Shown here: positions 10,018 to 44,860 of the stretch, piece by piece | How positions within the stretch are numbered: position 1 is the first letter of the stretch | Layout of the letters: the number at the start of each line of letters is the position of its first letter | IMG/VR virus record: IMGVR_UViG_3300020172_001601 | Location: 1-64,000 of that record | DNA length: 64,000 nt | Direction: 5' to 3' (one strand) | The notes under the pieces: generated by a model | Seen by the model: only the letters and a program-made list of their open reading frames with translations | Told to the model about the DNA's origin: nothing | The model's database searches: none | Made by a program: the position numbers and the translations under genes

Positions 10018-10092
10018 GTGCTTCTTTCATAATTTGTTGGGTAGCTCTATATAAGAGAGGGGAGATTGCCCTAAATTGGAGAGGAAACAAAT

Positions 10093-10677: not shown

Positions 10678-10738
10678 TCTTGTTTATGTCCATTGCATAG
10701 TTTAGAATTCAAGCTCCTCTAACTCATAGGAGAATGCA

Positions 10739-11287: not shown

Positions 11288-11717
11288 GCGAGTAATAGAA
11301 CTGGTTATCGTGGGCCTGTGGCTGACCATAGCTGTAGTGCTGTTTATTCACTACCAAAAGGACACCAACAAGACTGTCCCCATCCCTGACAAGTTGGTTG
11401 CTCCAACTGTGCCGGAATCCGAAAAGGGAAAGCGATTTGATGTTCGCAAGGTAACTGTTTTGCGTGGAGATTCTTTCGACATAACCATGAAGGATGAGGC
11501 GAATACCCGAATCCTGGGCAAGTTGCCCGTCATGGCCACTGAGAATGCGAAAGGAAAAGTGCTGGACCTGTTGAACCACAGCACGAATCCGAAAGTTGTT
11601 TTGCGTGAGAAGCAACCGGATGGCCGCTGGACTATTGATTTCTTTTTCACAAATAATGAAGGAAAAGAAATGAATTTGGTCGAGTGGCTGAGTTCCAATA
11701 ATCTGGTATACAAATGA
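11277..11717 (+). CDS. Membrane-anchored protein, possibly a degenerate thermonuclease (SNase-like) fold
   Basis: N-terminal TM; VTVLRGDSFDI resembles SNase V..DGDT; GRWTIDFF and NLVEWL..NNLV follow the SNase layout. Confidence 0.45.
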   Translation: MERRRVIELVIVGLWLTIAVVLFIHYQKDTNKTVPIPDKLVAPTVPESEKGKRFDVRKVTVLRGDSFDITMKDEANTRILGKLPVMATENAKGKVLDLLNHSTNPKVVLREKQPDGRWTIDFFFTNNEGKEMNLVEWLSSNNLVYK

Positions 11718-12904
11718 ACGAACAAGAGGGTGTAGTGACCGAACAACGGCGTCGTCGGTCCTCGGATGATCTGGCAATAGAAGCAGCGGAAGAGGATGGT
11801 AGTAGACAGGAGCCGCAGAAGCGTGGACGAGAAAATGTTCTCTCCAAAACTCAGCGGCTCTTATCGGAAAGGATCAAGGCGGCTCTTACGGAAAAGGGCA
11901 TGGCTAAGATCGCTATATTTACGCATCCTTGCCCTGACCCCGATGCCATTGGGTCACAAATGGGGCTTGCTTGGCTGCTTCGCAAAGCATATGAGGGTGT
12001 AGATGTTGACTGTTTTTACGATGGTCATCTTTCACACCCGCAGAACCAGCGAATGTGCAATTTGCTGGACCCGGAGTTGAAGCTCTATACAGACTGTCAA
12101 CCCGACGAATATGATCTTCGTGTATCTGTAGATACCGTGCCAGCGCACGCTAGTTGTCCAGATAACACGACATTCGATTTGGTTATTGACCACCATAGAG
12201 AAATACCAAATGGTGGATTCAAGGGCCTGTTCTTAAACCTCAAGGGTGGCAGTTGTTGTGCCACCATCTATCAACTCATCAAGGCTCATGGCCTTGGCTT
12301 CGAGGAAGACAATGATGCTGATTCCAAGGTAGCCACGGCTTTGCTGGTGGGCATCATCACTGATACTGAATATCAAACTTCAGACGATACCACTGATCTC
12401 GAACACGAAGCCTATCGAGAGTTATTTGAATATCGTAACTCTGCACACCTGAAGGAAATCACCCGATATAAACAGCCCCGTGAATGGGTTCAGGCTCGTG
12501 CATGTGTGGCTCAGAAGGCCCATGATCGCATTAAGGACGGCGTATTGATTCACGGTATTGGCTTCATCACTGGAAGCAATCGTGATTTGATCGCTGCTGT
12601 AGCCGATGATATGCTTTCCTGGGAGAACGTCGAAACCGCTGTGGCTTTTGCTGTAGTTGATGGCGACCGCATTGAAGGTTCAGTTCGCAGCATGAATGCT
12701 GCCCTTGCCGTACCAACACTCTGTAAAGAGTTGGGCCACGCTCTTGGTGGCTCTGGTGGCGGTAAATTGGGCAAAGGTGCATATGCCTATGCACTTGGCA
12801 GTTGTGCCAACGATGGCGAAATGGACGAAAGCATTAAAGAGAAGTTGTGGGAATTCATTCACGAACGAGAACTCAAGAGGCTCCACAAAATCATCAAGAA
12901 GTAG
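11714..12904 (+). CDS. DHH/DHHA1 phosphoesterase (NrnA-like)
   Basis: THPCPDPDAIGS, VDT, IDHH, GIITDT, GSVRS, glycine-rich GGSGGG. Confidence 0.9.
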   Translation: MNEQEGVVTEQRRRRSSDDLAIEAAEEDGSRQEPQKRGRENVLSKTQRLLSERIKAALTEKGMAKIAIFTHPCPDPDAIGSQMGLAWLLRKAYEGVDVDCFYDGHLSHPQNQRMCNLLDPELKLYTDCQPDEYDLRVSVDTVPAHASCPDNTTFDLVIDHHREIPNGGFKGLFLNLKGGSCCATIYQLIKAHGLGFEEDNDADSKVATALLVGIITDTEYQTSDDTTDLEHEAYRELFEYRNSAHLKEITRYKQPREWVQARACVAQKAHDRIKDGVLIHGIGFITGSNRDLIAAVADDMLSWENVETAVAFAVVDGDRIEGSVRSMNAALAVPTLCKELGHALGGSGGGKLGKGAYAYALGSCANDGEMDESIKEKLWEFIHERELKRLHKIIKK

Positions 12905-12908
12905 GAAT

Positions 12909-13205
12909 ATGAACTTCAACGAGTATTACCACTACTATCTCAGCTTGCATCAAAACAAGACTTGTCGCCGCTTGCACGTTTTAGGGCAATTGGCGACAAT
13001 CTCGTTTTTGATTTTCATTATCTACATGGGCGGGTGGTATTGGCTTTTGCTGCCCTTGTTGCCTTTTGTAGTGTATCCATTTGCTTGGAGTGGTCACTAC
13101 TTCTTTGAGCATAACGAACCTGCCGCTTTCAAGAACCCTATATGGGCGAAGCTGTGTGATTGGCGAATGTTATTCGACATTATCAGAGGCAGGATCGAAC
13201 TGTGA
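12909..13205 (+). CDS. DUF962/Mpo1-like membrane protein
   Basis: YYLSLHQNKTCRRLHVLG, FAWSGHYFFEHNEPAAFKNP; start re-called to ATG 12909. Confidence 0.85.
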   Translation: MNFNEYYHYYLSLHQNKTCRRLHVLGQLATISFLIFIIYMGGWYWLLLPLLPFVVYPFAWSGHYFFEHNEPAAFKNPIWAKLCDWRMLFDIIRGRIEL

Positions 13206-14006
13206 TTATTCCACAGGAACCTTTTCTCGTTGACGTTCCTCAGCCCAAGCCTTAGAAAAGGTTGGGTGTGGATATGGGATGGTTGCCAGCATTTCTCTGG
13301 TCTTCATAACCTCCCATTCAAAGCGTGGATTTTCTTTCTTTGACATTTCCACCACTCTATGGTCGGGCTGGCTTCCTGGTCCCCAAAACCAACTTTGCAT
13401 ACTGATCGTCTTGTCGATCATATTAGCATCACGTCGAACGAAGCCATAGTGATAGATGATGATTTCGTCAACTTGACGACCCATATATCGTGGATCGCAT
13501 TGCAATACTTCGGCGTCACCAAAAGCCGGACAATCCAGAGTCGCCAGTCGAACCACTTCGTCACTGACAGGTTTGTGTTCTTGTGCGATGTCATATCGTA
13601 AATAGTGATTGCAGTCACCCCAAAGGTTACAACGGCGAATCATATAGGAACGATTTGTCGGATGTTGTATGGCCTTTCTGATGGCCGGGAAACTGCGTTC
13701 ATGAATAACCTCATCAGCCTGAAGCATGAAATGCCAGTCTGTATTGAGGTATGACTTGGCAATATCGGCCAAGATTCTAAGTCGCTCGAATTTTTCGTGA
13801 CACTCCCAATTCGCTCCAGGGATTACCCTCAGCTTTGGCTGGCGGGCTTGAACCTGGGCAAGAAGGTCGAGTGTTCCGTCTGTGCTGCTGGCGTCTACGA
13901 CAACTACATCGTCGCATACAGCACAAAGACTGTCGAGGGCTTCAGCAACGCAATAATCAAACTGAATAGCGTTGCGAATAAACATTGAACCGCCAAGTGT
14001 AGGCAT
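13206..14006 (-). CDS. GT2-family glycosyltransferase
   Basis: VVVDASSTDGT, WHFMLQADE, IYHYGFVR; start re-called to ATG 14006. Confidence 0.85.
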   Translation of the reverse strand: MPTLGGSMFIRNAIQFDYCVAEALDSLCAVCDDVVVVDASSTDGTLDLLAQVQARQPKLRVIPGANWECHEKFERLRILADIAKSYLNTDWHFMLQADEVIHERSFPAIRKAIQHPTNRSYMIRRCNLWGDCNHYLRYDIAQEHKPVSDEVVRLATLDCPAFGDAEVLQCDPRYMGRQVDEIIIYHYGFVRRDANMIDKTISMQSWFWGPGSQPDHRVVEMSKKENPRFEWEVMKTREMLATIPYPHPTFSKAWAEERQREKVPVE

Positions 14007-16059: not shown

Positions 16060-17202
16060 ATGAGTTCCGTTGTCGAATTTCTAAAGCGATCTGCCGAACG
16101 TAACGGATTTGCCCGTGAGCGGTTTGAGGAACGCAAAATCCCTACTGACCATAGCAACTTAATCGTTATGCCGTTCTTTGGCGATTTAAGAAGCACTATG
16201 GTTATGTCCAGTCTATTGCTTCAACGATATAGACAAGAAGTCAAAAACTCTAAGTATTTCATTCTTGCTTCTTGGCCAGGGTTCCAGGGCATATTCCCTT
16301 ATGTGGATGAATATTGGGCCATCAATGATGAGGCTCACATTAAGAAGTTCTACGAACAGTCTGATGGTTTTAGGAACAAGTCCGACTTAACAACGATTTA
16401 TACTCGCAATCTCAATGAGTTCTTTCGTGACGTTGTTGATTACAAAGAATTGATCCCATATTACCAGAATGGTTTCACAAGTCAGTTCTTTGAAAAGTTC
16501 AGCACCACTAAAAGGTTCCTTCCTTTCGTGCCGTCCTCGACAGCATTAGGCAAAGACTTTAATCGGGAACTATCCACAAAGGCTGGCTACAAGGTATTCA
16601 TTCATCCTTCGATATTCGCCAAGCAATGGCATATCGGCAGAAGTCAAAATGTTCGCACTAAACGAGAGTTCTGGACTGAACTGGTTGAGAAGCTCTTGGC
16701 GAACAATTATGTCCCTGTTATTTGGCAAAATTATCTTTCCTATGATATTTCGCAAGAATTCGTAGGTCGATGCCTATTTATAGGAGAGACAGATGTGGTT
16801 CGTGTCTTATCGGCGATGCGGACCACGGGCTGTGTTCTGGACGTGTTCAATGGTTTGTCACGTCTGGCAATATTGGCCCGATGTCCATTCGTAGCCGTTG
16901 ATGAGCGTTCTAGGTATACGAACCTCAAAGAATACGAGATTGACGACTTGTGTGCCTCGGACATTCCGAAGGAATATATTTTCACTTTTTCCACTATAAT
17001 ATCAGACGGCAACCCATACAACTGGAGCCAGGATATTTTCCAGTCGATATTGAAAAAGTTGGATAATTTCCTGCCTGAGTTAAACCGAGACGAGTGGCCT
17101 TCGACGGGTGAAACCACTGAGGTCGTACCGTATAAAGAGTATGTGCGAACCAACGAGCGAATCAAGCTCGGCACACGACTTTTGAAGATTACTAGAGATT
17201 GA
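16060..17202 (+). CDS. GT-B/GT9-like protein, paralog of 14891..16057
   Basis: FGD...YFILASWPG...YVDEYW, LSRLAILARCP; GGAGG RBS before ATG 16060. Confidence 0.5.
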   Translation: MSSVVEFLKRSAERNGFARERFEERKIPTDHSNLIVMPFFGDLRSTMVMSSLLLQRYRQEVKNSKYFILASWPGFQGIFPYVDEYWAINDEAHIKKFYEQSDGFRNKSDLTTIYTRNLNEFFRDVVDYKELIPYYQNGFTSQFFEKFSTTKRFLPFVPSSTALGKDFNRELSTKAGYKVFIHPSIFAKQWHIGRSQNVRTKREFWTELVEKLLANNYVPVIWQNYLSYDISQEFVGRCLFIGETDVVRVLSAMRTTGCVLDVFNGLSRLAILARCPFVAVDERSRYTNLKEYEIDDLCASDIPKEYIFTFSTIISDGNPYNWSQDIFQSILKKLDNFLPELNRDEWPSTGETTEVVPYKEYVRTNERIKLGTRLLKITRD

Positions 17203-17216
17203 TTAAGGAGCCTAAA

Positions 17217-17492
17217 ATGGCGTGCAAAGTTGAACTGCGTGATCTGCCACCTAATGCAAGCTGGCAGGAAAGAGATATTGCCTTCAAGAAGATGTTTTCA
17301 GTCTTCAAGAAACAGGTTGCTGAGGCAGGAATACTGCAACAGTGTAAGAAGCACGAATTTTATGAAAGTCCTGGCGAAAAGAAACGCCGCAAGAAGAAGG
17401 AATCCCATAACGCACGGCTCAAGGCCAAGCTCCGGGAAAGTTTCCCAGAGCGAAAGCCTAAGAAAGATACCAAGAACAAAGGTGATAAATGA
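17217..17492 (+). CDS. rpsU: Ribosomal protein bS21 homolog
   Basis: FKKQVAEAGILQQCKKHEFYESPGEKKRRKK matches the bS21 core FKR...AGIL...R.RE.YEKP...R.RK; AAGGAG RBS. Confidence 0.85.
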   Translation: MACKVELRDLPPNASWQERDIAFKKMFSVFKKQVAEAGILQQCKKHEFYESPGEKKRRKKKESHNARLKAKLRESFPERKPKKDTKNKGDK

Positions 17493-17788: not shown

Positions 17789-18292
17789 ATGAAACCAAAA
17801 GCCGCACCCCTTGCGATAGTTCCCGTAGCCGATATTCCACAGGCGGTGGATGTCCCTGTCGATAATTTACTTCCTGTCTTTCGCACCATCACGCAGATGG
17901 AACAACTTTGCACAGCACAAGAAGGAATTGGCCTATCAGCGGTTCAGGTAGGCATTCCCTGGAAGTTATTTATCGTCCAAAGAGGCCACGGTTACGAATA
18001 TTACATCAACTGTGAGTATAATGGCATTGGTGAAAAACAAAAATCTATCGAAGGATGTTTATCTCTTCGAGACTCGCAGGGCAATTTGCGACGATTCGAG
18101 GTTGACCGATATTCCTCGATTGCCGTAAAGGGCAAGCAACTGAAAATATCATCCGACTCCCCTTCTTTGGTTTTGGATGATGTGGATCACATCGAACACG
18201 ATCTATATGCAGTTGTTTTTCAGCACGAGATAGATCACCACAATGATGTCCTTATCAGCGACATTGGCACCGAAGTCGAACTCACGAGGTAA
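17789..18292 (+). CDS. def: Peptide deformylase
   Basis: All three signature motifs: GIGLSAVQVG, EGCLS, QHEIDH. Confidence 0.95.
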   Translation: MKPKAAPLAIVPVADIPQAVDVPVDNLLPVFRTITQMEQLCTAQEGIGLSAVQVGIPWKLFIVQRGHGYEYYINCEYNGIGEKQKSIEGCLSLRDSQGNLRRFEVDRYSSIAVKGKQLKISSDSPSLVLDDVDHIEHDLYAVVFQHEIDHHNDVLISDIGTEVELTR

Positions 18293-18297
18293 GATAT

Positions 18298-18573
18298 ATG
18301 CTCAGTCAGAAACAATTGCGAGATGTTTGTTTGGTGTACGACACCACTTTTCAGAAGTGTCGATATTTGTCGCAGGACGAAAACGATTACACCAAGTTTT
18401 ACTGTTTGAAGAAAACGGCCAGAGCCAACGATATTGATGTTGAGTTGGACGACTTCATTCGTGACGCTCGGAAGAAGGGCAAAGACCCACGCAAAGAAAA
18501 TGTTCCCTTGGGAGATAATTGCCAAGGGTATCCATTGTTGCGACATATCGAACAAGGCTACGACAAGCCATAA
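18298..18573 (+). CDS. Hypothetical Cys-containing protein
   Basis: GAGGT RBS; followed by a terminator. Confidence 0.7.
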   Translation: MLSQKQLRDVCLVYDTTFQKCRYLSQDENDYTKFYCLKKTARANDIDVELDDFIRDARKKGKDPRKENVPLGDNCQGYPLLRHIEQGYDKP

Positions 18574-18600
18574 AAAAGGCCCGCATTTCTGCGGGCCTTT
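18572..18600. terminator. Bidirectional intrinsic terminator
   Basis: aaaggcccgca-tttc-tgcgggccttt between convergent genes. Confidence 0.85.
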
Positions 18601-18604
18601 CCAT

Positions 18605-19111
18605 TTACTTTGCCATTGATTTCTGAAGTCGCATCAGCATGTGATATACATGGCCTTCCGACTCTGTATTCATTGCTGCTCGAAGTACATTGTCGTTTAG
18701 CACCGGATCGTTGAAGCGGGCGATTTCTTTCGCCATGATTTCAGCGGTCTTTTCGCTTTTGACCGCACGATCTCGATACCAATAAAGTAGCATCCCGATA
18801 ACGGCCAGAGAGAACACGAGAATCAAAGCCCCGTCTCCCTGGAGAATTTGTACGCCACTGTTCTCGTTTCGAGACAATGAGGCGTTCAAGTTAAGAAGTC
18901 CATTCTGAACTTCCTTTAGTTGACTGTTCTGTATTTCGGCTGATTGCTTTAGCTTGCCAATTTCGGCCATTACGCCGTTTTGGTTATTGCGTATTTCGTC
19001 AATCCTACCGTTGTTGTTGTCGATTGGCGAGTTGTTCCGTGGGTTTAGGTTTGCGCATCCGCTCATTCCGACCGACAGAGCAATCACCAGAATTGTAAGA
19101 ATCCTTCTCAT
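18605..19111 (-). CDS. Lipoprotein with coiled coil and second TM helix (possible spanin-like)
   Basis: MRRILTILVIALSVGMSG|C lipobox, AGGAGG RBS, coiled coil, TM GALILVFSLAVIGMLLYWY. Confidence 0.65.
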   Translation of the reverse strand: MRRILTILVIALSVGMSGCANLNPRNNSPIDNNNGRIDEIRNNQNGVMAEIGKLKQSAEIQNSQLKEVQNGLLNLNASLSRNENSGVQILQGDGALILVFSLAVIGMLLYWYRDRAVKSEKTAEIMAKEIARFNDPVLNDNVLRAAMNTESEGHVYHMLMRLQKSMAK

Positions 19112-19211
19112 GGTGTAAATCCTCCTACAGTATGTATTGACAACCCAAAGTTTTTCTCGTATCTTTCTCACCAACCACCCCTCTACGCCAGACCAAAAAG
19201 GAGGTTGCAAT

Positions 19212-19700
19212 ATGGCGCAACAAAAATGGCAGGATGCAGACCTGGATTACGACGAGATCGAAGTTCAGGGTGGCGATGAATCGCCGGAAGAATATACGCC
19301 AGAGCAAGAACGTGCCATCAAGGTCTTTGCCCAGGATTTCTACAGTGATGTGAAAGCCCTGGCTCGACAATATATGGAGCAGTTCTTTCAGGATAAGATG
19401 CTTCACTGCGGCGGCAAAATTCCCAAATCACTTCTCTTCGCTGAACGCCGGGTTTCGATGGTCTTGAATTACGATATAATCAAGGGCGTCGAGCGAGCAT
19501 ACAAATATCTTGAACCCACATTGCGGATTCAAGATGTCGAATCCGCAAAGCAGACAGGTGAGGCCACAGACGATATTAAGCTCGTCAATGAAACCCTCAG
19601 TTTACTCGCTCGGTCAGGCATCCCACAGCAATTTGCTGGCGGTATGATGTGCTTGTACTTAGAGTTTATTGAGGGCGTCCATATTGGCACAGAACCGTGA
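19212..19700 (+). CDS. Hypothetical protein
   Basis: AAGGAGG RBS before ATG 19212. Confidence 0.75.
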   Translation: MAQQKWQDADLDYDEIEVQGGDESPEEYTPEQERAIKVFAQDFYSDVKALARQYMEQFFQDKMLHCGGKIPKSLLFAERRVSMVLNYDIIKGVERAYKYLEPTLRIQDVESAKQTGEATDDIKLVNETLSLLARSGIPQQFAGGMMCLYLEFIEGVHIGTEP

Positions 19701-19986
19701 TCTCAGTTTCCTAGCTCGACAATGGGAAACTGTTGAACTGCCCAAAGAGAAGAAGTATTTGCTCAGATACTTCAATACGCCGCTTCAAGCGGCCTTCTTA
19801 AAGTACGTCCACATCTTTGGAGATTACTCTAATTTCGTTGACCATACTGGCCTAGCAAGTAGCCCTCGATGGCTCGCAATCCTGTACAATAGATTGCAGA
19901 CATTGCAAACACTACACCGTGAAGCTAGGGCTAATATGGATATGACGGCCCTGGCTCACATTGAATCAGGGAATTACAAATTATGA
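19669..19986 (+). CDS. Hypothetical protein
   Basis: Fills the gap; ATGA-coupled to IDO; start uncertain. Confidence 0.6.
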   Translation: MRASILAQNRDLSFLARQWETVELPKEKKYLLRYFNTPLQAAFLKYVHIFGDYSNFVDHTGLASSPRWLAILYNRLQTLQTLHREARANMDMTALAHIESGNYKL

Positions 19987-21170
19987 GCATGTGGGATATT
20001 ACAGATCGTGGGTTTCTAGGCGTGGCCGATCCACTCGTTTCGCTCACGGCTAAAAACGAAAAGTATATTCCAGCCGCCGTTAGGTTGGAAAATATTGCTT
20101 CTGTTTTGCCGTATTGGATTGAAGAAAGATGTATACGAGAAGAACTCGTACACAACCTGCGTGAGATTGCCCCGTTGATTGATGGTGAGTTTTTACTGAA
20201 TCAAGATGAGGTAAAAACCGAACGGCTGATGCACCTGTATTCCTATATGGCCAGTGCTTATGTCTTCGCTAGACATGAGAATGCCGCCACGAGAATACCG
20301 TCAGAGATCGCTGTTCCACTTACTATGGTCGCTGAAAAGCTAGACCGCAAACCGATCCTTTCTTACGCTTCATATTGTTTAACCAATTGGGAGCGTATAG
20401 ACCCTAATGATGAAATCAAGTTGGGCAATATAAAATTGCTTACAAACTTTTCATCGCCAGAGTCGGGAAAATCAGATGAGGACTGGTTCATTCTGGTTCA
20501 TGTCGATATTGAAAATTGTGCTGCCGATGGTGTTGGTGCCTGTAAACAACTTTTGGAAAATCCCTGGAAGCAAGGCAACGAAGTTCACAATATTGTCACG
20601 GCCAACGATATTCTTACCAAGATTTTCGTCAGCTTGGCGAAGATGAATAAGACAATGGCAAAGATGCCAGATGAATGCAGTCCAGACAATTACTTCCGAT
20701 GGGTGAGGCCGTATATCTTCTCGTTCAATAACATGGTCTATAAAGGCTGTTTCCAAGATCAGCCAATTACCTGTCGAGGGGAAACCGGGGCGCAAAGTAG
20801 CATCATTCCTGCTTTTTTGGCGGCTCTCGAAATCAACCATCAGGATTCCATGCTGACGCATCACCTTATGGAGATGCGTGATTACATGCCAGCCCCTCAC
20901 CGACGATTTCTTTCAAATCTTGTGATCCAGACAGCGAATAATTCCGTTGTGGGGGTAGGTCTGCGAGATTTTGCTCGGCGTGACCCGGTGTTGAAGGACA
21001 TCTACAACGAGTGCGTCAATGAGATTATTGCCTTCCGAAACAAGCATTTCGAGTACGCAGTCAACTATATCTCCAAGAAGGTTGAAAATCCTTCCGGGAC
21101 GGGCGGTACGCCCTATGTCCCGTGGCTGAAACAACTTAGAGAAGAAACCGAGTCACACCTGATCCCGTAA
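19983..21170 (+). CDS. Indoleamine 2,3-dioxygenase family heme enzyme
   Basis: P.LSYASYCL.NW, DEDWFILVH, VRPYI, RGETGAQSS, MRDYMP..HRRFL, FRNKH (heme His), GTGGT. Confidence 0.92.
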   Translation: MSMWDITDRGFLGVADPLVSLTAKNEKYIPAAVRLENIASVLPYWIEERCIREELVHNLREIAPLIDGEFLLNQDEVKTERLMHLYSYMASAYVFARHENAATRIPSEIAVPLTMVAEKLDRKPILSYASYCLTNWERIDPNDEIKLGNIKLLTNFSSPESGKSDEDWFILVHVDIENCAADGVGACKQLLENPWKQGNEVHNIVTANDILTKIFVSLAKMNKTMAKMPDECSPDNYFRWVRPYIFSFNNMVYKGCFQDQPITCRGETGAQSSIIPAFLAALEINHQDSMLTHHLMEMRDYMPAPHRRFLSNLVIQTANNSVVGVGLRDFARRDPVLKDIYNECVNEIIAFRNKHFEYAVNYISKKVENPSGTGGTPYVPWLKQLREETESHLIP

Positions 21171-21176
21171 GTTTGC

Positions 21177-21205
21177 TTTACAGCACGGCAAAATCAGGGT
21201 AGAAT
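21177..21205 (+). promoter_or_regulatory. Early-type promoter TTTACA-N17-TAGAAT
   Basis: Same architecture at 56676, 58383, 61181 and 62338. Confidence 0.7.
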
Positions 21206-21246
21206 TGCGGCGTTGACACACAGAAAATTAGACGGGAAGCACAAAT

Positions 21247-22455
21247 ATGCTCAAGCGCTTAATGAGTCTCTTTTTGATGGCGAGTATGATTCTCGCAACC
21301 ATGCCAGAGGAGGCTTTTGCTGGGAAAGGAAGGTCTTATTCTTCCGGCAGAAGCTCGTCGTCGAGTCGGTCTTCGTCCTCGTCCTCGTCAAGTAGTCGTC
21401 CTTCCGGCAAGTCGTACTCTTCTGGTTCGTCCAATAAGGGTTCGTCGTTTGCTACGAAACCGAGTTCGCCGCCCAGCAAGCCATACTCGCCGCCCCAGGC
21501 ATCGAGTCCTAGTGGCAAGAAGTATTCTTCAGGGAGCAGCGCACCACCGGCTGCAAAGTCCAGTCCCCCAGCGGGCAAAAAATATTCATCTGGAAATTCG
21601 TCGCCGCCTGTAAAGTCGAGTCCACCGCCAGTTGCATCTGGTACGGATGGCAAGAAGTATTCATCAGGTTCACCGGGATCGCCACCACCATACACACCGG
21701 GAAAGCAATACACAGCCGGAAGTCCACCGCCATCAACTGGACCGCCAGTTGCCAATAAGTCTGCTGACGGCAATAGTCGTAAGCCAAGTGGTAGTGGGTT
21801 CGGCAATGCAATGAGCAGTGACGCCAAGCGTGTTGAAAGTCAGAAGCGATACGAGGCAGCAACCACTCCGAAGTCAACATATACGTCAAAGGGTGCTGAT
21901 GGCAAAGTCGTTCAGCAAACAATCAAGCCAGATTCTCCCCAGGTTCAAACTGTTCGTCGGAGTGTCACTCATGAACGATATGTGACCTACGACAATCGTG
22001 CCAGTGTGTTTTATGGTGGATACAGCCCGATGTATTATCATGACCCATTCAGCCCATTTTTGATGGGATGGATTATGTCTGATGCCATCAATAGCCATCA
22101 ACGGGCAATGTGGATGTATCATCATCAGCCAGTGTCGGCGGGTGGCACGATTGACGACGCTCGGTATGCTGAAATGCTCAAAAAGGATGCAAAACTACAA
22201 GCTGAGATTGACCAATTGAAGGCGCAGAATATTACTCGTGATCCGAGTTATGTGCCGCCTGAAATGGCCGACAATCCTGACTTGATGTTCAATAAAGATT
22301 TCGTGGATGCTTCTTACAATCCTGTAGAAGTAGAAGCGAATACTCCATCGGGGAGTAGCGGAGCAGGGGCATTCTTCTTCTGGATGTTCATCGTCTTCGT
22401 GGTGGTTGTTGTTGGTGGCTTGGCCGTCTACTTCCTGTTCATGAAGGAATACTAA
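21247..22455 (+). CDS. Secreted Ser/Pro/Gly-rich membrane-anchored protein
   Basis: Signal peptide ending AFA, repeated G(K/R)xYSSG motif, C-terminal TM. Confidence 0.75.
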   Translation: MLKRLMSLFLMASMILATMPEEAFAGKGRSYSSGRSSSSSRSSSSSSSSSRPSGKSYSSGSSNKGSSFATKPSSPPSKPYSPPQASSPSGKKYSSGSSAPPAAKSSPPAGKKYSSGNSSPPVKSSPPPVASGTDGKKYSSGSPGSPPPYTPGKQYTAGSPPPSTGPPVANKSADGNSRKPSGSGFGNAMSSDAKRVESQKRYEAATTPKSTYTSKGADGKVVQQTIKPDSPQVQTVRRSVTHERYVTYDNRASVFYGGYSPMYYHDPFSPFLMGWIMSDAINSHQRAMWMYHHQPVSAGGTIDDARYAEMLKKDAKLQAEIDQLKAQNITRDPSYVPPEMADNPDLMFNKDFVDASYNPVEVEANTPSGSSGAGAFFFWMFIVFVVVVVGGLAVYFLFMKEY

Positions 22456-22458
22456 GCG

Positions 22459-23163
22459 ATGAAATTGTACGAGCTTCTGTTGAGAAAGATCGGCTTGTGG
22501 AGTGATTCCTCTCAGCCAGCCGAGGTCGATAAGGCCCAAGAGGATTTGATTTATAATCCCATCGGTTGTAAAATCGGTGGGGTGGTCAAGATCGACTCTT
22601 TGGACTTTCGAGATCATCGGTTTACGGTGAGGGAGATTCGAGAATACTCTCTGTCTCTCGGCGGGAACAAACACCGTATGGTCGATTATGTCCTGTTGGC
22701 CCGTCCCATCGGGAAGCCCGACTTCACTTGTCGGCTCCGTATTGTGCCGAACCCGGACAGCAAGAGCAAAACGACGCATCGAGCGTTGCTTATGTCGCTG
22801 TACGACGATCTGGCGTACAATGAGGGCCTTCATGAAGTCGTGAAAGATGACACGAAGAAGTTCGTGATTGATGATGACACCGATCCGAACAACATCATTC
22901 ATGATGAGTTTTGGCGGGTGAATGATGTAGGAACTTCCTACGTCAGCAACATCAAAATCCTTGCTGATTCCGATGGGAGTGGCAAGGTGGACGAGAGTGA
23001 AGTCTCCAGAGGTTCAGTCGAGTTTTGGGATTACTCCCGAAACACCGACATGGACGGCGTTGAAGTCGAAGAGTTCGTCTTCGTGGAGATGGACAAGAAA
23101 GATGGTTGGTTCAAAGTCTGGCGTGGGTCTGAGGTCAACCCGGAACGCATCGACGTGTTCTAA
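22459..23163 (+). CDS. DUF4178/DUF2491 (YjfK-like) protein
   Basis: NPIGCKIGGVVKID, EFWDYSR, FVEM...WFKVWRG.EV layout; directly upstream of pspA. Confidence 0.55.
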   Translation: MKLYELLLRKIGLWSDSSQPAEVDKAQEDLIYNPIGCKIGGVVKIDSLDFRDHRFTVREIREYSLSLGGNKHRMVDYVLLARPIGKPDFTCRLRIVPNPDSKSKTTHRALLMSLYDDLAYNEGLHEVVKDDTKKFVIDDDTDPNNIIHDEFWRVNDVGTSYVSNIKILADSDGSGKVDESEVSRGSVEFWDYSRNTDMDGVEVEEFVFVEMDKKDGWFKVWRGSEVNPERIDVF

Positions 23164-23222
23164 AGTTGCCCCGGCGTCGGGTGTCAACGTGATTCAAACT
23201 TCTCACAAAGGGGATTCTGGTT

Positions 23223-24014
23223 ATGAGTATTTTCTCTGCAATCGTGTTGGGTGGTGTGGTTCTTTTGGTGCTGGCAGCAGTCAGCCCTCCGGCTCGTCGG
23301 TTCTTCAAGGCCCTTGGCCTTTGGGGTGGGGCGCAGGCCGATAAGAGTGCTGAAGCGGTGTTGAATGCTGACCCGCTGGGAGTTCTCAAGACGCAGATTG
23401 CCAATGCTGCCGAGAACGGCAAGCAGGCCAATTCTGTGGTCGAGGCTGCTGCCAAGCAGTTGATTTCTTTGGAAAATCAGATTGCTGATGGACTGAAGGA
23501 GCAACAGCGACTTACCAATCGCATCGAGTCGGTTTTGGCAAAGGGCGATCCGAACAAGAACGCTCCGAAGTATGCCGCTGATCTTGCTCGTGTCGAAGAA
23601 AACCTGGGGATCAACCAGGAACAGAAAGAGCTTGCTCAACAGCAGTACGACGACAACCTCAAGTTGGTCGAACGCTTCGAGCGGGAGATTCAAGAGGCCC
23701 GTAAGGACGCCGCTGATCTCGGTCTGCAACTTCAGCAGTCTGAAGCTGAGAAGAACCTGCACCAAATGTCGGCTTCTCTCAAGGACAAGTTGAATGTGGG
23801 CGACTTGGCTGCTGCTCGTCAGCGTGTCAAGGACCAGATCAACTCCAACAAGGGTTCTGCCAAGGCTGCTCGTGACCTGAACCGGGTCGGTCTGGCCGAA
23901 GAGGAAGACGAAGAGTTGGAACGCAGTGTCGCCGCCGATGCTGTTCTGGCTCGCTTTAAGAAAGCCGATGGTGCTGATGCCGGTGGCTCCGGCTCCACCT
24001 TTTCTGGTAGCTAA
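23223..24014 (+). CDS. PspA/IM30 (ESCRT-III-like) protein with N-terminal membrane anchor
   Basis: ADPLGVLKTQI, long helical heptads, C-terminal A.ADAVLARFK typical of the PspA helix 5. Confidence 0.75.
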   Translation: MSIFSAIVLGGVVLLVLAAVSPPARRFFKALGLWGGAQADKSAEAVLNADPLGVLKTQIANAAENGKQANSVVEAAAKQLISLENQIADGLKEQQRLTNRIESVLAKGDPNKNAPKYAADLARVEENLGINQEQKELAQQQYDDNLKLVERFEREIQEARKDAADLGLQLQQSEAEKNLHQMSASLKDKLNVGDLAAARQRVKDQINSNKGSAKAARDLNRVGLAEEEDEELERSVAADAVLARFKKADGADAGGSGSTFSGS

Positions 24015-24082
24015 GGCCAGCTACCCGAACTTGGAAGTCGGAATTGATTATCCAAGTATTGTGAAGCCTAAGAAGTAACTTG

Positions 24083-24113
24083 ACCCCGCTGTGGAAACAC
24101 AGCGGGGTTTTTT
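24083..24113 (+). terminator. Intrinsic terminator
   Basis: accccgctgtg-gaaa-cacagcggggt followed by a U tract. Confidence 0.9.
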
Positions 24114-24126
24114 CGTTTATGGCACT

Positions 24127-24133
24127 CTAAATA
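24127..24133 (+). promoter_or_regulatory. Late-type promoter motif CTAAATA
   Basis: T4-late-like; 7 nt before ATG 24141. Confidence 0.6.
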
Positions 24134-24140
24134 TCAAGTA

Positions 24141-25169
24141 ATGAGCAACTTCAATAAATATCTCAGTTCCCGACGAGTCGATGTAGACGTAGACCGTATT
24201 GCTAGGCTTATGGTTCAAAAGAACGTCGATCCCAATTGGTATATTCGTCGCTACTTAGAAGCGATGGAATCTGATGATGGTTTGATCCTTGAAGGTTGGC
24301 TGGGGAGTTTCTTCAAACGTATTGGCAATGCGTGGAGTGGGTTTTGGAAAGACCCTAATCCTCAAGATTCGCCATCGACCCGTTTAGAGGCCGCAAAGAA
24401 GGCCCTGCAAGACCTTGTACAGATGGTACAACAGAACCAAGGCGCTGAATCAAACGTCTTAGGCGTCGTCCTACGAGGTCTGGAGCAGTCTTTGGGCATC
24501 ATTGATAAGATTGAGCCGCCTCTCAAGACAGCCGAACCACGAATCAAGCAATTTCAAGCGGCCCAGGCAGGTGGACAAGCTGGCACCGTCATGTTCCAGG
24601 GCGATCCCAACAATCGACTGCCGGATGACCTTCATCAGAAGTTTGAAGACATCATGCACCGTCGCAATATGCTGATTCAGCAGCCCGATAGTGAAGCCAA
24701 GGCGACCAATCTGGTCAAGAATGATGATGAGCTATTGCAGTTCAGGCAGCAACTTGAGGATCAATATCAGCAAATGGCCCCCAAGACGCCGCAGGATCAG
24801 CAAAATAAAGAACGTATTAAAACATTTCTAACCCGGATAGATACCGATGCAACCTTCCGAGAGATCGAGAGTTTACTTGATTTTGCTCGAAAGCGGACTC
24901 AAGGCAACAATTTGATGGTGTCTCGTCCGCAAGGTTACGAACAGGCAGTATTGGCTTTTAGGAACATAGCGGCCACAACAACGGACCCTAAACAACAAAA
25001 AGATCAGTTGTTGCATTGGTATCAGTCGTTGCCTGCCAATAATCCAGTAAAGCAATTCGTTATGAACGACGTTCGGGAACATCCTGAGTTGGGCAACGAG
25101 TTGGAATTGTTTTGGAAATACTCCCAAGAATGGATAAATAAACTACCACATTTTTTGGCTTCGAGGTAA
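24141..25169 (+). CDS. Hypothetical Gln-rich protein, candidate internal head/ejection protein
   Basis: MSNFNKYL N-terminus; LILE-GWLGSFFKR resembles a prohead-protease site followed by an amphipathic helix. Confidence 0.65.
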   Translation: MSNFNKYLSSRRVDVDVDRIARLMVQKNVDPNWYIRRYLEAMESDDGLILEGWLGSFFKRIGNAWSGFWKDPNPQDSPSTRLEAAKKALQDLVQMVQQNQGAESNVLGVVLRGLEQSLGIIDKIEPPLKTAEPRIKQFQAAQAGGQAGTVMFQGDPNNRLPDDLHQKFEDIMHRRNMLIQQPDSEAKATNLVKNDDELLQFRQQLEDQYQQMAPKTPQDQQNKERIKTFLTRIDTDATFREIESLLDFARKRTQGNNLMVSRPQGYEQAVLAFRNIAATTTDPKQQKDQLLHWYQSLPANNPVKQFVMNDVREHPELGNELELFWKYSQEWINKLPHFLASR

Positions 25170-33010: not shown

Positions 33011-33296
33011 TTTTTGGTTAGATCGCAAGAAGCCAGTCGATGCTGACACGACGCCTTTGTTGAAAGTCGGCGTTCGCCGACTCATGGTTTACATTGAGCG
33101 ACGAACTCATTACTTGTGGCAGGAAGATGCGTCTATGTACACATTTTCTTCCAAGGTCAAAGAGTTGTTAGACCAGCTACGTCGTCGTGGTGCTTTTTGT
33201 GATTACAACTTCATTTGTTCTGAAAAGACAATGGTGATCGGCATTCAGCCCAATGAAAGAGTTCCTTGGGTATATCTGGAACAGGAATTAGTATGA
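33003..33296 (+). CDS. Hypothetical protein
   Basis: GTG 33003 with GGAGG RBS; in frame with listed ORF 32823..33296. Confidence 0.6.
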   Translation: MRNFWLDRKKPVDADTTPLLKVGVRRLMVYIERRTHYLWQEDASMYTFSSKVKELLDQLRRRGAFCDYNFICSEKTMVIGIQPNERVPWVYLEQELV

Positions 33297-44816: not shown

Positions 44817-44860
44817 GCCCTTATATATCTGAAATGAAACAAAAAAAGGATACATAAGGC

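What the first reader, a model, noticed from the sequence alone, without database searches (positions are those of the whole stretch)
19983..21170. Phage-encoded indoleamine 2,3-dioxygenase
Seen: a full-length IDO with heme His, the GETGAQSS loop and GTGGT. Established: IDO opens Trp to N-formylkynurenine, the entry to kynurenine/de novo NAD synthesis, and is sporadic in bacteria. I know of no characterised phage IDO. Inference: it may boost NAD against NAD-depleting defences (the phage also has an NAD-dependent ligase), drain Trp or indole signals, or scavenge O2.
Basis: partly seen in the sequence, partly recalled or inferred. Interest (0 to 1): 0.75.

Follow-up and report, generated by a model that had tools for sequence, protein, structure and literature searches.

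The report
Huge-phage indoleamine 2,3-dioxygenase gene
A clade of very large freshwater and sediment bacteriophages carries, at a fixed place in the genome, an intact copy of the heme enzyme that opens tryptophan to N-formylkynurenine. The rest of the tryptophan-to-NAD route is missing, so the enzyme looks real and is new for phages, but its purpose is open and is probably not NAD supply.

Summary
Window 19983-21170(+) encodes a 395-aa IDO-family protein (Pfam PF01231, E 2.8e-61; AlphaFold pLDDT 91; TM about 0.8 to human IDO1/IDO2). It has the proximal heme His, the Trp-carboxylate Arg, the GETGAQSS loop and GTGGT.

The window is the start of a 340-kb IMG/VR huge-phage record. The gene sits at one syntenic site in at least 10 independently assembled relatives, including a complete 511-kb genome with terminal repeats and a 673-kb scaffold. 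It diverges in step with its neighbours and is under purifying selection (dN/dS 0.06-0.09). All phage copies can form one clade whose sister is Gemmataceae (Planctomycetota).

The NAD idea is not supported:
- No formamidase, kynureninase, 3-HAO, QPRT, NAMPT or NAD synthase was found in this record.
- The first three are also absent from the complete relative.
- The nearest bacterial IDO owners mostly lack kynureninase and 3-HAO and have NadA.

The best reading is a stand-alone, active Trp dioxygenase kept as an auxiliary metabolic gene. Its benefit is unproven.

Two caveats apply. Several close relatives have eroded active sites, and one related 595-kb GenBank phage lacks the gene. No phage IDO was found in GenBank phages, BFVD or the paper library.

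The parts
19983..21170 (+). IDO-family heme dioxygenase gene, 395 aa (P0001)
   Evidence: Pfam PF01231 at E 2.8e-61. PDB sequence matches to IDO1/IDO2. AlphaFold pLDDT 91 and Foldseek TM about 0.8 to IDO1/IDO2. Key residues are Y128, F169, H173, Y237, F238, R242, G266-S273, R352, H355 and G372-T376. dN/dS is 0.06-0.09 against L098.
19669..19986 (+). Small ORF of about 100 aa whose stop overlaps the IDO start (ATGA). Function unknown.
   Evidence: A homologue lies directly before IDO, with the same 4-base overlap, in L002, L003, L097 and L098. It is also present in LR756511.1, which lacks IDO. It has no Pfam, NCBIfam or PHROG match and no heme or Fe-S motif visible in the sequence.
19137..19700 (+). 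Upstream co-directional ORF, probably starting at the ATG near 19212. Function unknown.
   Evidence: It is conserved in the syntenic relatives at 22-60% identity. It has no family match.
19137..19165 (+). Sigma-70-like promoter match (TTGACA, 17 nt, TATCTT) at the head of the co-directional gene run
   Evidence: This is a consensus match only. The gene before it (18605-19210) is on the other strand.
21247..22455 (+). Downstream ORF, 402 aa: N-terminal signal/TM-like segment, Ser-rich low-complexity region, conserved C-terminal domain and a C-terminal hydrophobic segment
   Evidence: Alignment A3. No Pfam, NCBIfam or PHROG match. The Atlas search found only unnamed clusters. It follows IDO in L002, L003, L011/L094, L013, L096 and L098, but not in L006-L008 or L012.
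22459..23163 (+). Downstream ORF, 234 aa, function unknown
   Evidence: It is conserved with the previous ORF.
23223..24014 (+). Downstream ORF, 263 aa, with a weak PspA/IM30-like match
   Evidence: Pfam PF04012 at E 1.1e-5, 25.7 bits, below the cut-off of 33.9. The same family is recorded on the homologues in L096, L097 and L098.
24082..24109 (+). Strong intrinsic-terminator-like hairpin (12-bp stem, 8 G-C pairs, T tail) that closes the co-directional run beginning near 19137
   Evidence: The same hairpin sequence turns up on other short contigs in runs X1 and X5 (tables 7-8).

Best explanation
The gene encodes an active, cytoplasmic, heme-b-dependent L-tryptophan 2,3-dioxygenase of the bacterial IDO type. 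It uses O2 to open the indole ring of free L-Trp and makes N-formylkynurenine. It is an auxiliary metabolic gene of a clade of huge phages (about 0.35-0.67 Mb) found in freshwater and sediment. It was probably exchanged once with bacteria whose nearest living IDO owners are Gemmataceae (Planctomycetota), and since then it has been inherited vertically at one genomic site. The phage encodes only this first step, so any further conversion (formamidase to kynurenine plus formate) is left to the host. The benefit is therefore most likely one of two things: removal of free Trp (amino-acid-starvation signalling, or control of translation during a long infection), or supply of N-formylkynurenine/kynurenine. 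Feeding NAD synthesis is unlikely. What is shown: family membership, fold, conservation of the catalytic and substrate-binding residues, phage location, synteny, purifying selection, and absence of downstream pathway genes. What is inferred: enzyme activity, L-Trp as substrate, the direction of gene transfer and the physiological benefit. I put about 0.75 on 'active Trp dioxygenase', about 0.9 on 'genuine conserved phage gene', and only about 0.3 on the Trp-drain benefit specifically.
For: Family and fold.

Active site: the residues equivalent to human Y126, F163, F226/F227, R231 (Trp carboxylate), G261-S268, R343, H346 (heme ligand) and T379 in GTGGT (Trp ammonium) are all present. They are kept in 51 of 59 phage-clade sequences, 20 of 20 Gemmataceae-clade sequences and 73 of 73 other bacterial sequences. 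The position of human S167 is His (H173), as in TDO and the S167H variant 6cxu.

Phage identity.

Same site in independent assemblies: L002, L003, L004, L006/7, L008, L011/L094, L012, L013, L096, L097, L098 and the P0004 contig all show S21 - RHH - peptide deformylase ... small ORF - IDO ... dCMP deaminase - TPP enzyme - IF3. IDO identity of 41-90% tracks that of the neighbouring genes.

Purifying selection: dN/dS 0.063 (NG86) and 0.087 (ML), against 0.03-0.2 for the neighbours.

Composition: gene GC 45.8% against genome GC 47.8%, so the gene is not a recent arrival.

Phylogeny: a phage clade with SH-aLRT 95 is sister to a Gemmataceae clade with SH-aLRT 97. Placing all 63 phage-associated rows in one clade is not rejected (p-AU 0.54). 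The Gemmataceae gene lies between metX, the homocysteine synthase gene and glgB, so it is truly chromosomal.

Stand-alone status.
Against: There is no biochemical or expression evidence, and no RNA run was listed.

In the window's own 13-member subclade, six sequences have lesions at key positions. L097/P0040 has H355K and H173L. P0064 has R242Q and further changes. P0009, P0011 and P0002 have changes in the GETGAQSS loop. L098/P0003, at 90% identity, has the whole GTGGT end replaced. The related 595-kb phage LR756511.1 keeps both flanks but has no IDO. The function is therefore dispensable, or in some lineages not catalytic.

Many bacterial IDOs are reported to be poor Trp catabolisers (my recollection of Yuasa et al. 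2011, cited in PMC4191572 but not read here).

The host is unknown. The phage clade's GC of 35-56% differs from the roughly 60% of the Gemmataceae loci.

The record is only 69% complete, so a partner gene could lie in the missing third. The complete relative G092 argues against that.
Confidence: 0.6

Rival explanations
1. NAD supply or counter-defence. IDO raises flux from Trp into the host kynurenine pathway to quinolinate and NAD+, offsetting NAD-depleting defences such as Thoeris, SIR2 or DSR.
For: IDO is the first step of the Trp-to-quinolinate route, which exists in some bacteria (Kurnasov et al. 2003, cited in PMC13464706). One of 13 IDO-bearing Gemmataceae genomes (G069) has both kynureninase and 3-HAO. 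The phage encodes an NAD-dependent ligase. It also encodes a CinA-like plus NMN/NaMN-adenylyltransferase-like fusion at G000 136369-137517. The bacterial homologue of that fusion lies directly upstream of IDO in about 17 SAR86 loci. The complete relative G092 carries a NAMPT-like gene.
Against: This record has no formamidase, kynureninase, 3-HAO, QPRT, NAMPT or NAD synthase. G092 (complete) and G088 have no formamidase, kynureninase or 3-HAO. Of the 13 IDO-bearing Gemmataceae genomes, 12 have NadA, 10 lack kynureninase and 12 lack 3-HAO. The 10 IDO-bearing SAR86 genomes have neither kynureninase nor NadA, so in those bacteria IDO does not lead to quinolinate. The CinA/NMNAT-like fusion does not co-occur with IDO in phages: it is absent from G092 and G088, and only an NMNAT-like part is present in the IDO-less LR756511.1. 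All described phage NAD countermeasures (NARP1, 2 and 3) are one- or two-step salvage routes from NAD breakdown products (10.1101/2024.02.11.579819; PMC13464706). An eight-step de novo route is slow and costs a scarce amino acid.
Confidence: 0.13
2. The family is the same but the chemistry or substrate differs. The protein oxidises another indole compound (D-Trp, 5-hydroxy-Trp, a Trp-derived metabolite or a peptide-bound Trp), or acts as a mono-oxygenase or peroxygenase like some IDO/TDO-superfamily biosynthetic enzymes.
For: IDOs are broader in substrate than TDOs, and ancestral IDOs have been proposed to be general indole oxidisers (PMC4191572). The distal His173 in place of Ser, and E267/T268 in place of human G262/S263, make the pocket differ from IDO1. 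The same phage block carries a TPP enzyme whose best NCBIfam matches are indolepyruvate/phenylpyruvate decarboxylases, together with an aldehyde dehydrogenase. This hints at a wider interest in aromatic amino-acid metabolites.
Against: R242 and T373 are nearly invariant. In IDO1 the equivalent residues hold the alpha-carboxylate and alpha-ammonium of Trp, which argues for a free alpha-amino acid as substrate. The TPP enzyme and aldehyde dehydrogenase are also present in LR756511.1, which has no IDO, so they do not depend on it. The TPP enzyme scores below both curated cut-offs (354 against 554.5 bits).
Confidence: 0.12
3. The gene is a non-catalytic or decaying passenger. It is a leftover of an old transfer, kept for a non-enzymatic role (heme or O2/NO binding, or a structural role) or on its way to being lost.
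For: Six of 13 sequences in the window's own subclade have changes at catalytic positions, including loss of the heme His in L097 and loss of the GTGGT end in L098. LR756511.1 has no IDO. Some IDO relatives are oxygen carriers, such as the abalone IDO-like myoglobin (PMC4191572).
Against: The window's copy is intact at all 20 positions checked. Fifty-one of 59 phage-clade sequences are intact or nearly so. dN/dS of 0.06-0.09 matches core neighbours. The gene is retained across relatives as distant as 41% identity, including a complete genome. Some variant sequences come from single low-coverage Logan assemblies and may contain errors.
Confidence: 0.1
4. The contig is cellular, or the gene is a bacterial contaminant or chimera, and not a phage gene at all.
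For: IMG/VR labels two IDO-bearing records as 'provirus' (G089, G091). One syntenic contig is binned in a 'Chloracidobacterium' MAG (L013). The record carries many cell-like genes (S21, IF3, DnaJ, tRNA ligases).
Against: The window has tail-fibre and virion structural genes. It shares 16-27 syntenic genes per 21 kb with other viral records, including G092, which has direct terminal repeats, 100% completeness and a terminase. The same gene order recurs in more than 10 assemblies from different samples. An independent assembly is continuous across the gene. The gene's GC equals the genome's GC. Translation genes are typical of huge phages.
Confidence: 0.02

Closest known systems
Bacterial IDO (PF01231) of Gemmataceae/Planctomycetota and other bacteria; the bacterial IDOs surveyed by Yuasa, Ushigoe and Ball 2011 (cited in PMC4191572)
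   Same: It has 46-50% identity over the full length and the same length of about 370-395 aa. It shares the same signature residues, including the distal His, GETGAQSS and (G/A)TGGT. It is the sister clade in the tree. It is also often a stand-alone gene without the rest of the kynurenine pathway.
   Different: Here the gene is carried by a virus, at a fixed site among phage genes, and forms its own clade. The Gemmataceae copies have ATGGT where the phage and other bacteria have GTGGT. IDO is sporadic in Gemmataceae: 14 of 81 genomes searched.
Human IDO1 and IDO2 (e.g. PDB 2d0t, 6e46, 7nge, 9uyy)
   Same: It shares the two-domain all-helical fold, with TM 0.78-0.82. The proximal His, the Arg that binds the Trp carboxylate, the Phe/Tyr pair, the G-x-x-G-x-Q-S-S loop and the GTGGT JK-loop Thr all align.
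   Different: Identity is only 23-25%. It has His at the S167 position, as in TDO and the S167H mutant 6cxu. It has E267/T268/G269 where IDO1 has G262/S263/A264. Its N-terminal small domain is shorter. There is no evidence for the immune-regulatory roles.
IDO-fold proteins of giant eukaryotic viruses in BFVD: Harvfovirus A0A3G5A0E3 (annotated tryptophan-tRNA ligase, 768 aa) and Catovirus CTV1 IDO A0A1V0SAS2
   Same: They are virus-encoded IDO-fold proteins. The Harvfovirus model matches with TMq 0.83 and 24% identity. A link between IDO and Trp-charging or translation is suggested there, and the phage is also rich in translation genes and has a short TrpRS-like ORF.
   Different: Those are viruses of eukaryotes. 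The Harvfovirus protein is twice as long, apparently an IDO-TrpRS fusion. The Catovirus match is poor (TM 0.32). Neither has been characterised, as far as the library shows.
Tryptophan 2,3-dioxygenase (TDO, PF03301), the usual bacterial first enzyme of the kynurenine pathway
   Same: It would catalyse the same reaction, and it shares the distal His feature.
   Different: TDO is an unrelated sequence family and a tetramer. The phage protein matches IDO, not TDO. I ran no TDO search in the phage.
Phage NAD+ reconstitution pathways NARP1, NARP2 and NARP3
   Same: These are phage metabolic genes aimed at NAD. A relative (G092) has a NAMPT-like gene, and this phage has an NMNAT-like domain protein.
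   Different: They are salvage routes built from NAD breakdown products or nicotinamide riboside (10.1101/2024.02.11.579819; PMC13464706). IDO belongs to none of them, and no de novo route from Trp has been described in phages.

Membership tests
Indoleamine 2,3-dioxygenase family (Pfam PF01231) | Profile match above the curated gathering score over most of the domain | tested here: met
   208 bits against a cut-off of 26, E 2.8e-61, residues 4-365 on profile positions 5-359 of 412. The whole-genome scan gave 194 bits.
Indoleamine 2,3-dioxygenase family (Pfam PF01231) | IDO fold (small plus large helical domains around a heme pocket) | tested here: met
   AlphaFold2 pLDDT 91 and pTM 0.90. The top 50 Foldseek PDB hits are all IDO1/IDO2, with TM 0.75-0.82 and E about 1e-17.
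Indoleamine 2,3-dioxygenase family (Pfam PF01231) | Proximal heme-ligand histidine (human H346) and neighbouring Arg (R343) | tested here: met
   H355 and R352 align with H346 and R343. His is kept in 56 of 59 phage-clade sequences and in all 93 bacterial sequences.
Indoleamine 2,3-dioxygenase family (Pfam PF01231) | L-Trp recognition: the Arg that binds the carboxylate (R231), the Thr of GTGGT that binds the ammonium (T379), and the aromatic pair (F226/F227) | tested here: met
   R242, T373 in GTGGT 372-376, and Y237/F238.
Indoleamine 2,3-dioxygenase family (Pfam PF01231) | Distal loop G-x-x-G-x-Q-S-S over the heme (human 261-268) | tested here: met
   GETGAQSS at 266-273. This is the form common to all bacterial members examined.
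Indoleamine 2,3-dioxygenase family (Pfam PF01231) | Binds heme b and converts Trp plus O2 to N-formylkynurenine | not testable with these tools
   This needs expression, a Soret spectrum and an activity assay.
Kynurenine pathway of de novo NAD synthesis (Trp to quinolinate) | Kynurenine formamidase (KynB, cyclase family PF04199) alongside the dioxygenase | tested here: not met
   No match in G000 or in seven other IDO-bearing viral records, including the complete G092. Alpha/beta-hydrolase-type formamidases were not searched.
Kynurenine pathway of de novo NAD synthesis (Trp to quinolinate) | Kynureninase (TIGR01814) | tested here: not met
   No match in G000 or in the seven other viral records. 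It scores above the cut-off in only 2 of 13 IDO-bearing Gemmataceae genomes and 0 of 10 SAR86 genomes.
Kynurenine pathway of de novo NAD synthesis (Trp to quinolinate) | 3-hydroxyanthranilate 3,4-dioxygenase (PF06052) and quinolinate phosphoribosyltransferase (PF01729) | tested here: not met
   3-HAO is absent from G000, G092 and G088 and present in 1 of 13 Gemmataceae genomes. QPRT is absent from G000.
Kynurenine pathway of de novo NAD synthesis (Trp to quinolinate) | Kynurenine 3-monooxygenase | not tested
Phage NAD+ reconstitution pathways (NARP1/2/3) | NAMPT plus NMNAT (NARP2), Adps plus Namat (NARP1), or PnuC plus NadR-like (NARP3) | tested here: inconclusive
   G000 has no NAPRTase/NAMPT family match. 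It has one CinA-like plus NMNAT-like fusion. Adps, Namat and PnuC were not searched. IDO is not a component of any of these pathways.
Viral auxiliary metabolic gene (operational definition) | A host-type metabolic gene lying inside a viral genome between viral genes, recurring in related viruses and under purifying selection | tested here: met
   Flanking phage genes and synteny in more than 10 assemblies. dN/dS 0.06-0.09. A bacterial sister clade.

The most novel reading that the evidence does not exclude
A lineage of huge phages has kept a tryptophan-destroying heme dioxygenase for a very long time. It uses the enzyme the way mammalian cells use IDO1: to collapse the free Trp pool of the infected cell. 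That would impose amino-acid starvation on host translation (and on competing phages), while the phage's own translation genes (S21, IF3, peptide deformylase, tRNA ligases, a TrpRS-like ORF) keep its protein synthesis going. The kynurenine produced might also act as a released signal or protectant. This would be a new class of phage take-over mechanism, and a striking convergence with vertebrate innate immunity and with the IDO-TrpRS fusion seen in a giant virus.
Probability: 0.2. Interest if true: 0.85.

Novelty: new member of a known kind. Interest (0 to 1): 0.55.

Why it matters
IDO is one of the most studied enzymes in immunology, yet its role in bacteria is poorly understood and it has not been described in phages. 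This analysis shows it is not a one-off oddity. It is a conserved accessory gene of a widespread clade of 0.35-0.67-Mb freshwater and sediment phages, with an intact active site and strong purifying selection. That adds aromatic amino-acid catabolism to the list of processes that phages carry genes for.

The stand-alone status, seen in the phages and also in most of the nearest bacteria and in SAR86, points to a use of Trp oxidation other than NAD synthesis. That question has been open for bacterial IDOs since they were first surveyed.

The natural series of variants offers ready-made controls for experiments: intact copies, a His-to-Lys copy, a copy with the GTGGT end deleted, and a genome lacking the gene.

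The work also corrects a tempting over-interpretation. The presence of IDO should not be scored as an NAD counter-defence.

Tried and rejected
- **Known phage IDOs.** Megablast of the locus and tblastn of the protein against 50,697 GenBank phages found nothing. PHROGs has no family for it. A single-sequence scan of IMG/VR found nothing. Only the alignment-based scan found seven records.
- **Upstream partner.** I asked whether the small ORF coupled to IDO could be an electron donor of the cytochrome b5 or ferredoxin type. It has no family match, and no heme or Fe-S motif is visible in the translation. Rejected.
- **Peptide deformylase as formamidase.** I asked whether the peptide deformylase 2 kb upstream could act as the N-formylkynurenine formamidase. 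It is also conserved in LR756511.1, which has no IDO, so it does not depend on IDO. It is an ordinary huge-phage translation gene. Rejected as a link, though not tested biochemically.
- **Downstream ORF as hydrolase.** The ORF at 21247-22455 is a Ser-rich protein with signal/TM-like ends, not an enzyme-like protein. I ran no further search on it.
- **TPP enzyme plus aldehyde dehydrogenase as an IDO-linked pathway.** Both are present without IDO in LR756511.1, and no aminotransferase (PF00155) is in the record. Left as an observation only.
- **CinA-like/NMNAT-like fusion as the NAD link.** It is adjacent to IDO in SAR86 but shows no co-occurrence with IDO in phages, and SAR86 lacks kynureninase. 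Unexplained.
- **Expression data.** The first two requests to the look-up of sequencing runs failed. No RNA run was listed for the gene.
- **Host.** Host identification was not achieved. The window has no tRNA genes and there is no spacer resource. The Gemmataceae sister clade is only a hint, and GC content does not match.
- **Literature.** Yuasa et al. 2011 is not held in the library.
- **Complex prediction.** Not used. A heme-ligand job yields no verdict.
Full report
**Observation.** The ORF at 19983-21170(+) is real. It runs from ATG to TAA and gives 395 aa. It matches Pfam IDO (PF01231) with 208 bits against a cut-off of 26 (E 2.8e-61) over nearly the whole domain. Its only PDB sequence relatives are human IDO2 and IDO1, E 1e-26 to 1e-24. 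An AlphaFold2 model built on 55 homologues has mean pLDDT 91 and pTM 0.90. Its best 50 Foldseek PDB matches are all IDO1/IDO2 with TM 0.75-0.82.

The HMMER alignment to IDO1 places the key residues as follows:
- H355 on the heme ligand H346, and R352 on R343.
- R242 on R231, which binds the Trp carboxylate.
- Y237/F238 on F226/F227.
- GETGAQSS (266-273) on the GGSAGQSS loop.
- T373 of GTGGT on T379 of the JK loop, which binds the Trp ammonium.
- A histidine (H173) at the position of IDO1 Ser167, as in TDO and in the engineered S167H IDO1 (6cxu).

**Is it a phage?** Yes. The window is bases 1-64000 of a 340,341-bp IMG/VR virus record, linear, with CheckV completeness 69%. The window itself has a collagen-like tail fibre (596-1966), a DnaE-type polymerase (5659-8460), a virion structural protein (43485-44855, minus strand) and an NAD-dependent ligase. 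It also has the translation-type genes typical of huge phages: ribosomal protein S21, peptide deformylase, IF3 and DnaJ.

My simple ORF call gives 519 genes, 93% coding, three quarters of them on one strand. The nearest GenBank phage by polymerase is the 595-kb uncultured phage LR756511.1. The record is syntenic with IMG/VR record G092, which is 511,233 bp, has direct terminal repeats, is 100% complete by CheckV and carries a terminase.

An independent Logan assembly of a freshwater metagenome holds 18500-24400 without any difference in a 78-kb contig. Other freshwater, sediment and aquaculture runs hold identical fragments or a relative about 94% identical. The 'cellular contig' refutation does not apply.

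**Distribution and history.** A search of 5.8 billion proteins found 4,637 IDO relatives. About 60 of them, at 48-92% identity, fall in one clade with the window's protein. Every member whose contig I inspected lies in the same gene order. That order is S21 - RHH protein - peptide deformylase - a few small ORFs - a roughly 100-aa ORF overlapping the IDO start - IDO - a variable group of unknown ORFs - dCMP deaminase - a 543-aa TPP enzyme - IF3 - Fe-S assembly protein - aldehyde dehydrogenase.

The inspected contigs are:
- L002 (104 kb), L003 (155 kb), L096 (106 kb), L097 (119 kb), L098 and the P0004 contig.
- The IMG/VR records L006/L007, L008 (436 kb) and L012 (511 kb).
- L011, a 134-kb IMG/VR record that is part of a 673-kb scaffold (L094).
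- L013, a 46-kb contig binned into a 'Chloracidobacterium' MAG, which is plainly this phage type.

IDO identity to the window (41-90%) tracks that of the flanking genes. The gene's GC (45.8%) equals the genome's (47.8%), while the clade spans 35-56% GC.

In the maximum-likelihood tree, the main phage clade (SH-aLRT 95) is sister to a clade of Gemmataceae/Planctomycetota sequences (SH-aLRT 97). L012 and one other viral contig sit just outside. A tree that holds all 63 phage-associated rows together is slightly better than the free tree and is not rejected (p-AU 0.54). The Gemmataceae gene is genuinely chromosomal, lying between metX, the homocysteine synthase gene and glgB. It is sporadic there, in 14 of 81 genomes.

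The simplest history is one old exchange between this phage lineage and Planctomycetota-like bacteria, followed by vertical descent. The direction is not resolved, because the tree is unrooted.

Two further IMG/VR contigs (L009/L100 and L010/L099) carry IDO in different phage-like contexts with small ORFs, a Gp23 fragment, Toprim and PD-(D/E)XK genes. The L010 copy is sister to that of the syntenic phage L008, so the gene has also moved between phages.

LR756511.1 keeps both flanks, including the two ORFs that precede IDO, but has three small ORFs where IDO should be. As L012 is at least as distant as LR756511.1, this is most simply a loss.

**Constraint.** Against L098 (90% amino-acid identity), dN/dS is 0.063 (NG86) or 0.087 (ML), within the range of the neighbouring genes (0.03-0.2). 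Of 59 phage-clade sequences, 51 keep all, or all but one conservative, of the 20 catalytic and binding positions I scored. So do all 93 bacterial sequences.

The exceptions are informative, and all lie in the window's own 13-member subclade:
- L097/P0040 has Lys for the heme His and Leu for the distal His.
- P0064 has lost the Arg and much of the loop.
- P0009, P0011 and P0002 have altered loops.
- L098/P0003 has the last 35 residues, including GTGGT, replaced by a 17-residue tail. A similar variant appears in run X6.

The window's copy is intact. The enzyme is therefore generally maintained but is dispensable, or re-purposed, in some lineages.

**Test of the NAD interpretation.** If the phage used IDO to make NAD, one would expect downstream genes in the phage, or a host that has them. 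Neither is seen.
- *This record.* It has no cyclase-type kynurenine formamidase, kynureninase, 3-HAO, QPRT, NAPRTase/NAMPT, NAD synthase or class I/II aminotransferase.
- *Relatives.* Because the record is 69% complete, I repeated the search on seven other IDO-bearing viral records. None has a formamidase or kynureninase. The complete G092 and the 85%-complete G088 also have no 3-HAO. G092 has a NAMPT-like salvage gene.
- *Gemmataceae.* Among 13 IDO-bearing genomes, 12 have NadA (the aspartate route to quinolinate), 2 have a kynureninase above the cut-off (plus one in fragments), 1 has 3-HAO, and 9 have some cyclase-family protein.
- *SAR86.* Ten IDO-bearing genomes have neither kynureninase nor NadA.

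So this bacterial type of IDO is usually a stand-alone enzyme.

One lead pointed the other way. The phage encodes a 382-aa protein (G000 136369-137517, minus strand). Its C-terminal half has the NMN/NaMN adenylyltransferase signatures (GSFNPFHSGH, ISSTxIR). Its N-terminal half is weakly CinA/PncC-like: 14 of 16 family members match PF02464, with a best E of 3e-4. Its SAR86 homologue lies immediately upstream of IDO in about 17 loci.

However, that gene is absent from G092 and G088. In LR756511.1, which has no IDO, it is represented only by an NMNAT-like piece. It does not travel with IDO in phages. All described phage NAD countermeasures are short salvage routes (10.1101/2024.02.11.579819; PMC13464706). 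I rate the NAD reading at about 0.13.

**What it most likely does.** The conserved Arg and Thr that clamp the amino-acid end of the substrate argue for free L-Trp, or a close analogue, rather than indole or indoleamines. The protein has no signal peptide and should act in the cytoplasm of the infected cell. The phage-encoded chemistry stops at N-formylkynurenine. Host formamidases would give kynurenine and formate.

The gene lies in a co-directional run that starts at a promoter-like site (19137-19165) and ends at a strong terminator-like hairpin (24082-24109). Its neighbours are small unknown proteins, a Ser-rich protein with signal/TM-like ends, and a weakly PspA-like protein. None looks like a pathway partner.

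I therefore commit to an active, stand-alone Trp dioxygenase kept as an auxiliary metabolic gene. I consider removal of free Trp the most likely benefit (about 0.3). That removal could act through starvation signalling, control of translation in a phage that brings its own translation factors, or competition with other phages. Production of kynurenines, and O2 or superoxide consumption, are lesser possibilities. This last step is inference.

**Comparison with what is known.** The protein meets every sequence and structure criterion of the IDO family that can be tested in silico. Only heme binding and activity remain untested. It fails the criteria for belonging to a Trp-to-NAD pathway or to NARP-type systems.

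The closest known relatives are uncharacterised bacterial IDOs. The only other virus-encoded IDO folds in BFVD are from giant viruses of eukaryotes. One of them, from Harvfovirus, is a 768-aa protein annotated as tryptophan-tRNA ligase, apparently an IDO-TrpRS fusion. That is interesting because this phage also has a short TrpRS-like ORF and a TyrRS.

I found no paper on a phage IDO or TDO in the library. JGI's automatic annotation already labels several of these metagenomic proteins 'indoleamine 2,3-dioxygenase', so the sequences are public but undescribed.

**Verdict.** The finding is real and moderately interesting: a new member of a known enzyme family in a new setting. It is conserved across a large clade of huge phages, and its function is open and testable. 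The proposed NAD role is not supported.

**Limits.**
- There is no biochemistry or expression data, and the host is unknown.
- Several comparisons rest on MAGs and single-sample assemblies.
- The trees were 'quick' searches.
- KMO, TDO and alpha/beta-hydrolase formamidases were not searched.
- Only about 14 of the 63 phage-clade sequences were checked by genomic context.

Noticed in passing
window 29137-30768 (+) and 33266-34780 (+): A 543-aa TPP enzyme has indolepyruvate/phenylpyruvate decarboxylases as its best NCBIfam matches (TIGR03394, 354 bits, E 1.7e-105). That is far above acetolactate synthases but below the curated cut-off of 554.5. An aldehyde dehydrogenase (Pfam E 1e-126) lies nearby. 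Both are highly conserved across the phage clade: 120 hits at 59-99% identity, which JGI auto-names 'indolepyruvate decarboxylase'. Both are present in LR756511.1, which lacks IDO. Together they look like a keto-acid to aldehyde to acid module, with the substrate unknown.
   Followed up: partly
G000:C1:136369-137517 (-) (= L093:12369-13517); SAR86 loci such as L069:4828-5937: A 382-aa fusion joins a weakly CinA/PncC-like N-terminal half to an NMN/NaMN-adenylyltransferase-like C-terminal half (GSFNPFHSGH and ISSTxIR motifs). Its 28-30% identical homologue sits immediately upstream of IDO, on the same strand, in about 17 SAR86 genomes that have neither kynureninase nor NadA. The IDO-NMNAT-like adjacency in SAR86 is unexplained.
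   Followed up: partly
L097:10001-11104 (P0040); L098:10001-11131 (P0003); P0064, P0009, P0011, P0002: Close relatives of the window's IDO have eroded active sites. In L097 the heme His is Lys and the distal His is Leu. In L098, which is 90% identical overall, the C-terminal segment with GTGGT is replaced by a short unrelated tail. All such cases fall in the window's own 13-member subclade.
   Followed up: partly
L116 (LR756511.1 312577-342208), about 11500-13250 in locus coordinates: The 595-kb GenBank huge phage shares the whole block, including both ORFs that precede IDO. Where IDO and its downstream group lie in the window, it has three small ORFs (144, 146 and 151 aa). The site behaves as a variable island.
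   Followed up: yes
L013 (JAYVUD010000189.1, 46,487 bp, filed under a Chloracidobacterium sp. MAG): This contig has 11 syntenic matches to the phage within 13 kb, including the IDO block. It is almost certainly a huge-phage contig binned into a bacterial MAG, so GTDB-based taxon counts for IDO include at least one phage copy.
   Followed up: partly
L011 / G091 (IMGVR_UViG_3300049215_000772, 134 kb) and L094 (ERZ12294693 scaffold_68_c1, 673,178 bp): IMG/VR classes the 134-kb piece as a 'provirus'. The identical IDO and flanks lie on a 673-kb scaffold that is syntenic with the huge phages. Either only part of a very large phage genome was recognised as viral, or the scaffold is a phage-host join. 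I did not resolve this.
   Followed up: no
window 17199-17492, 17789-18292, 30768-31346, 36650-37732; G000 76429-77058, 127653-128963, 130248-130721, 301241-302341: The phage has a rich set of translation and chaperone genes: ribosomal protein S21, peptide deformylase, IF3, DnaJ, a short TrpRS-like ORF (trpS 92 bits, below cut-off), an ArgRS-like protein, an RF-1-domain protein (ArfB/peptidyl-tRNA hydrolase-like) and a TyrRS. A homologue of the RF-1-domain protein lies about 5 kb from IDO in some SAR86 genomes.
   Followed up: partly
BFVD entry A0A3G5A0E3 (Harvfovirus sp., 768 aa): A giant-virus protein annotated as tryptophan-tRNA ligase matches the phage IDO model over its whole length (TMq 0.83, TMt 0.44). 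It appears to be an IDO domain fused to a TrpRS. No paper on it was found.
   Followed up: no
L100 (IMGVR_UViG_3300003465_000373 / JGI P52013CM_1002856), 8535-11179: In an unrelated phage-like contig, IDO lies close downstream of an ADP-ribosylglycohydrolase (PF03747), among small ORFs. A thioredoxin, a Gp23 fragment and a 157-aa cytidylyltransferase-like protein lie nearby.
   Followed up: no
window 24083-24114: The terminator hairpin after the IDO gene run also occurs on other short contigs, with different flanks, in runs X1 and X5. It may be a repeated terminator or regulatory element of this phage or its relatives.
   Followed up: no
G000:C1:312414-321752 (+): A single 3,112-aa ORF is by far the largest in the record. 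Most other large ORFs (650-1054 aa) have no PHROG match.
   Followed up: no
window 35012-35860 (+) and 34732-35019: A nucleotide-sugar (UDP-glucose-type) dehydrogenase match covers only profile positions 80-295 of 413 in a 282-aa ORF. The N-terminal NAD-binding part may lie in the preceding short ORF, which would mean a split or frameshifted gene. I did not examine this.
   Followed up: no
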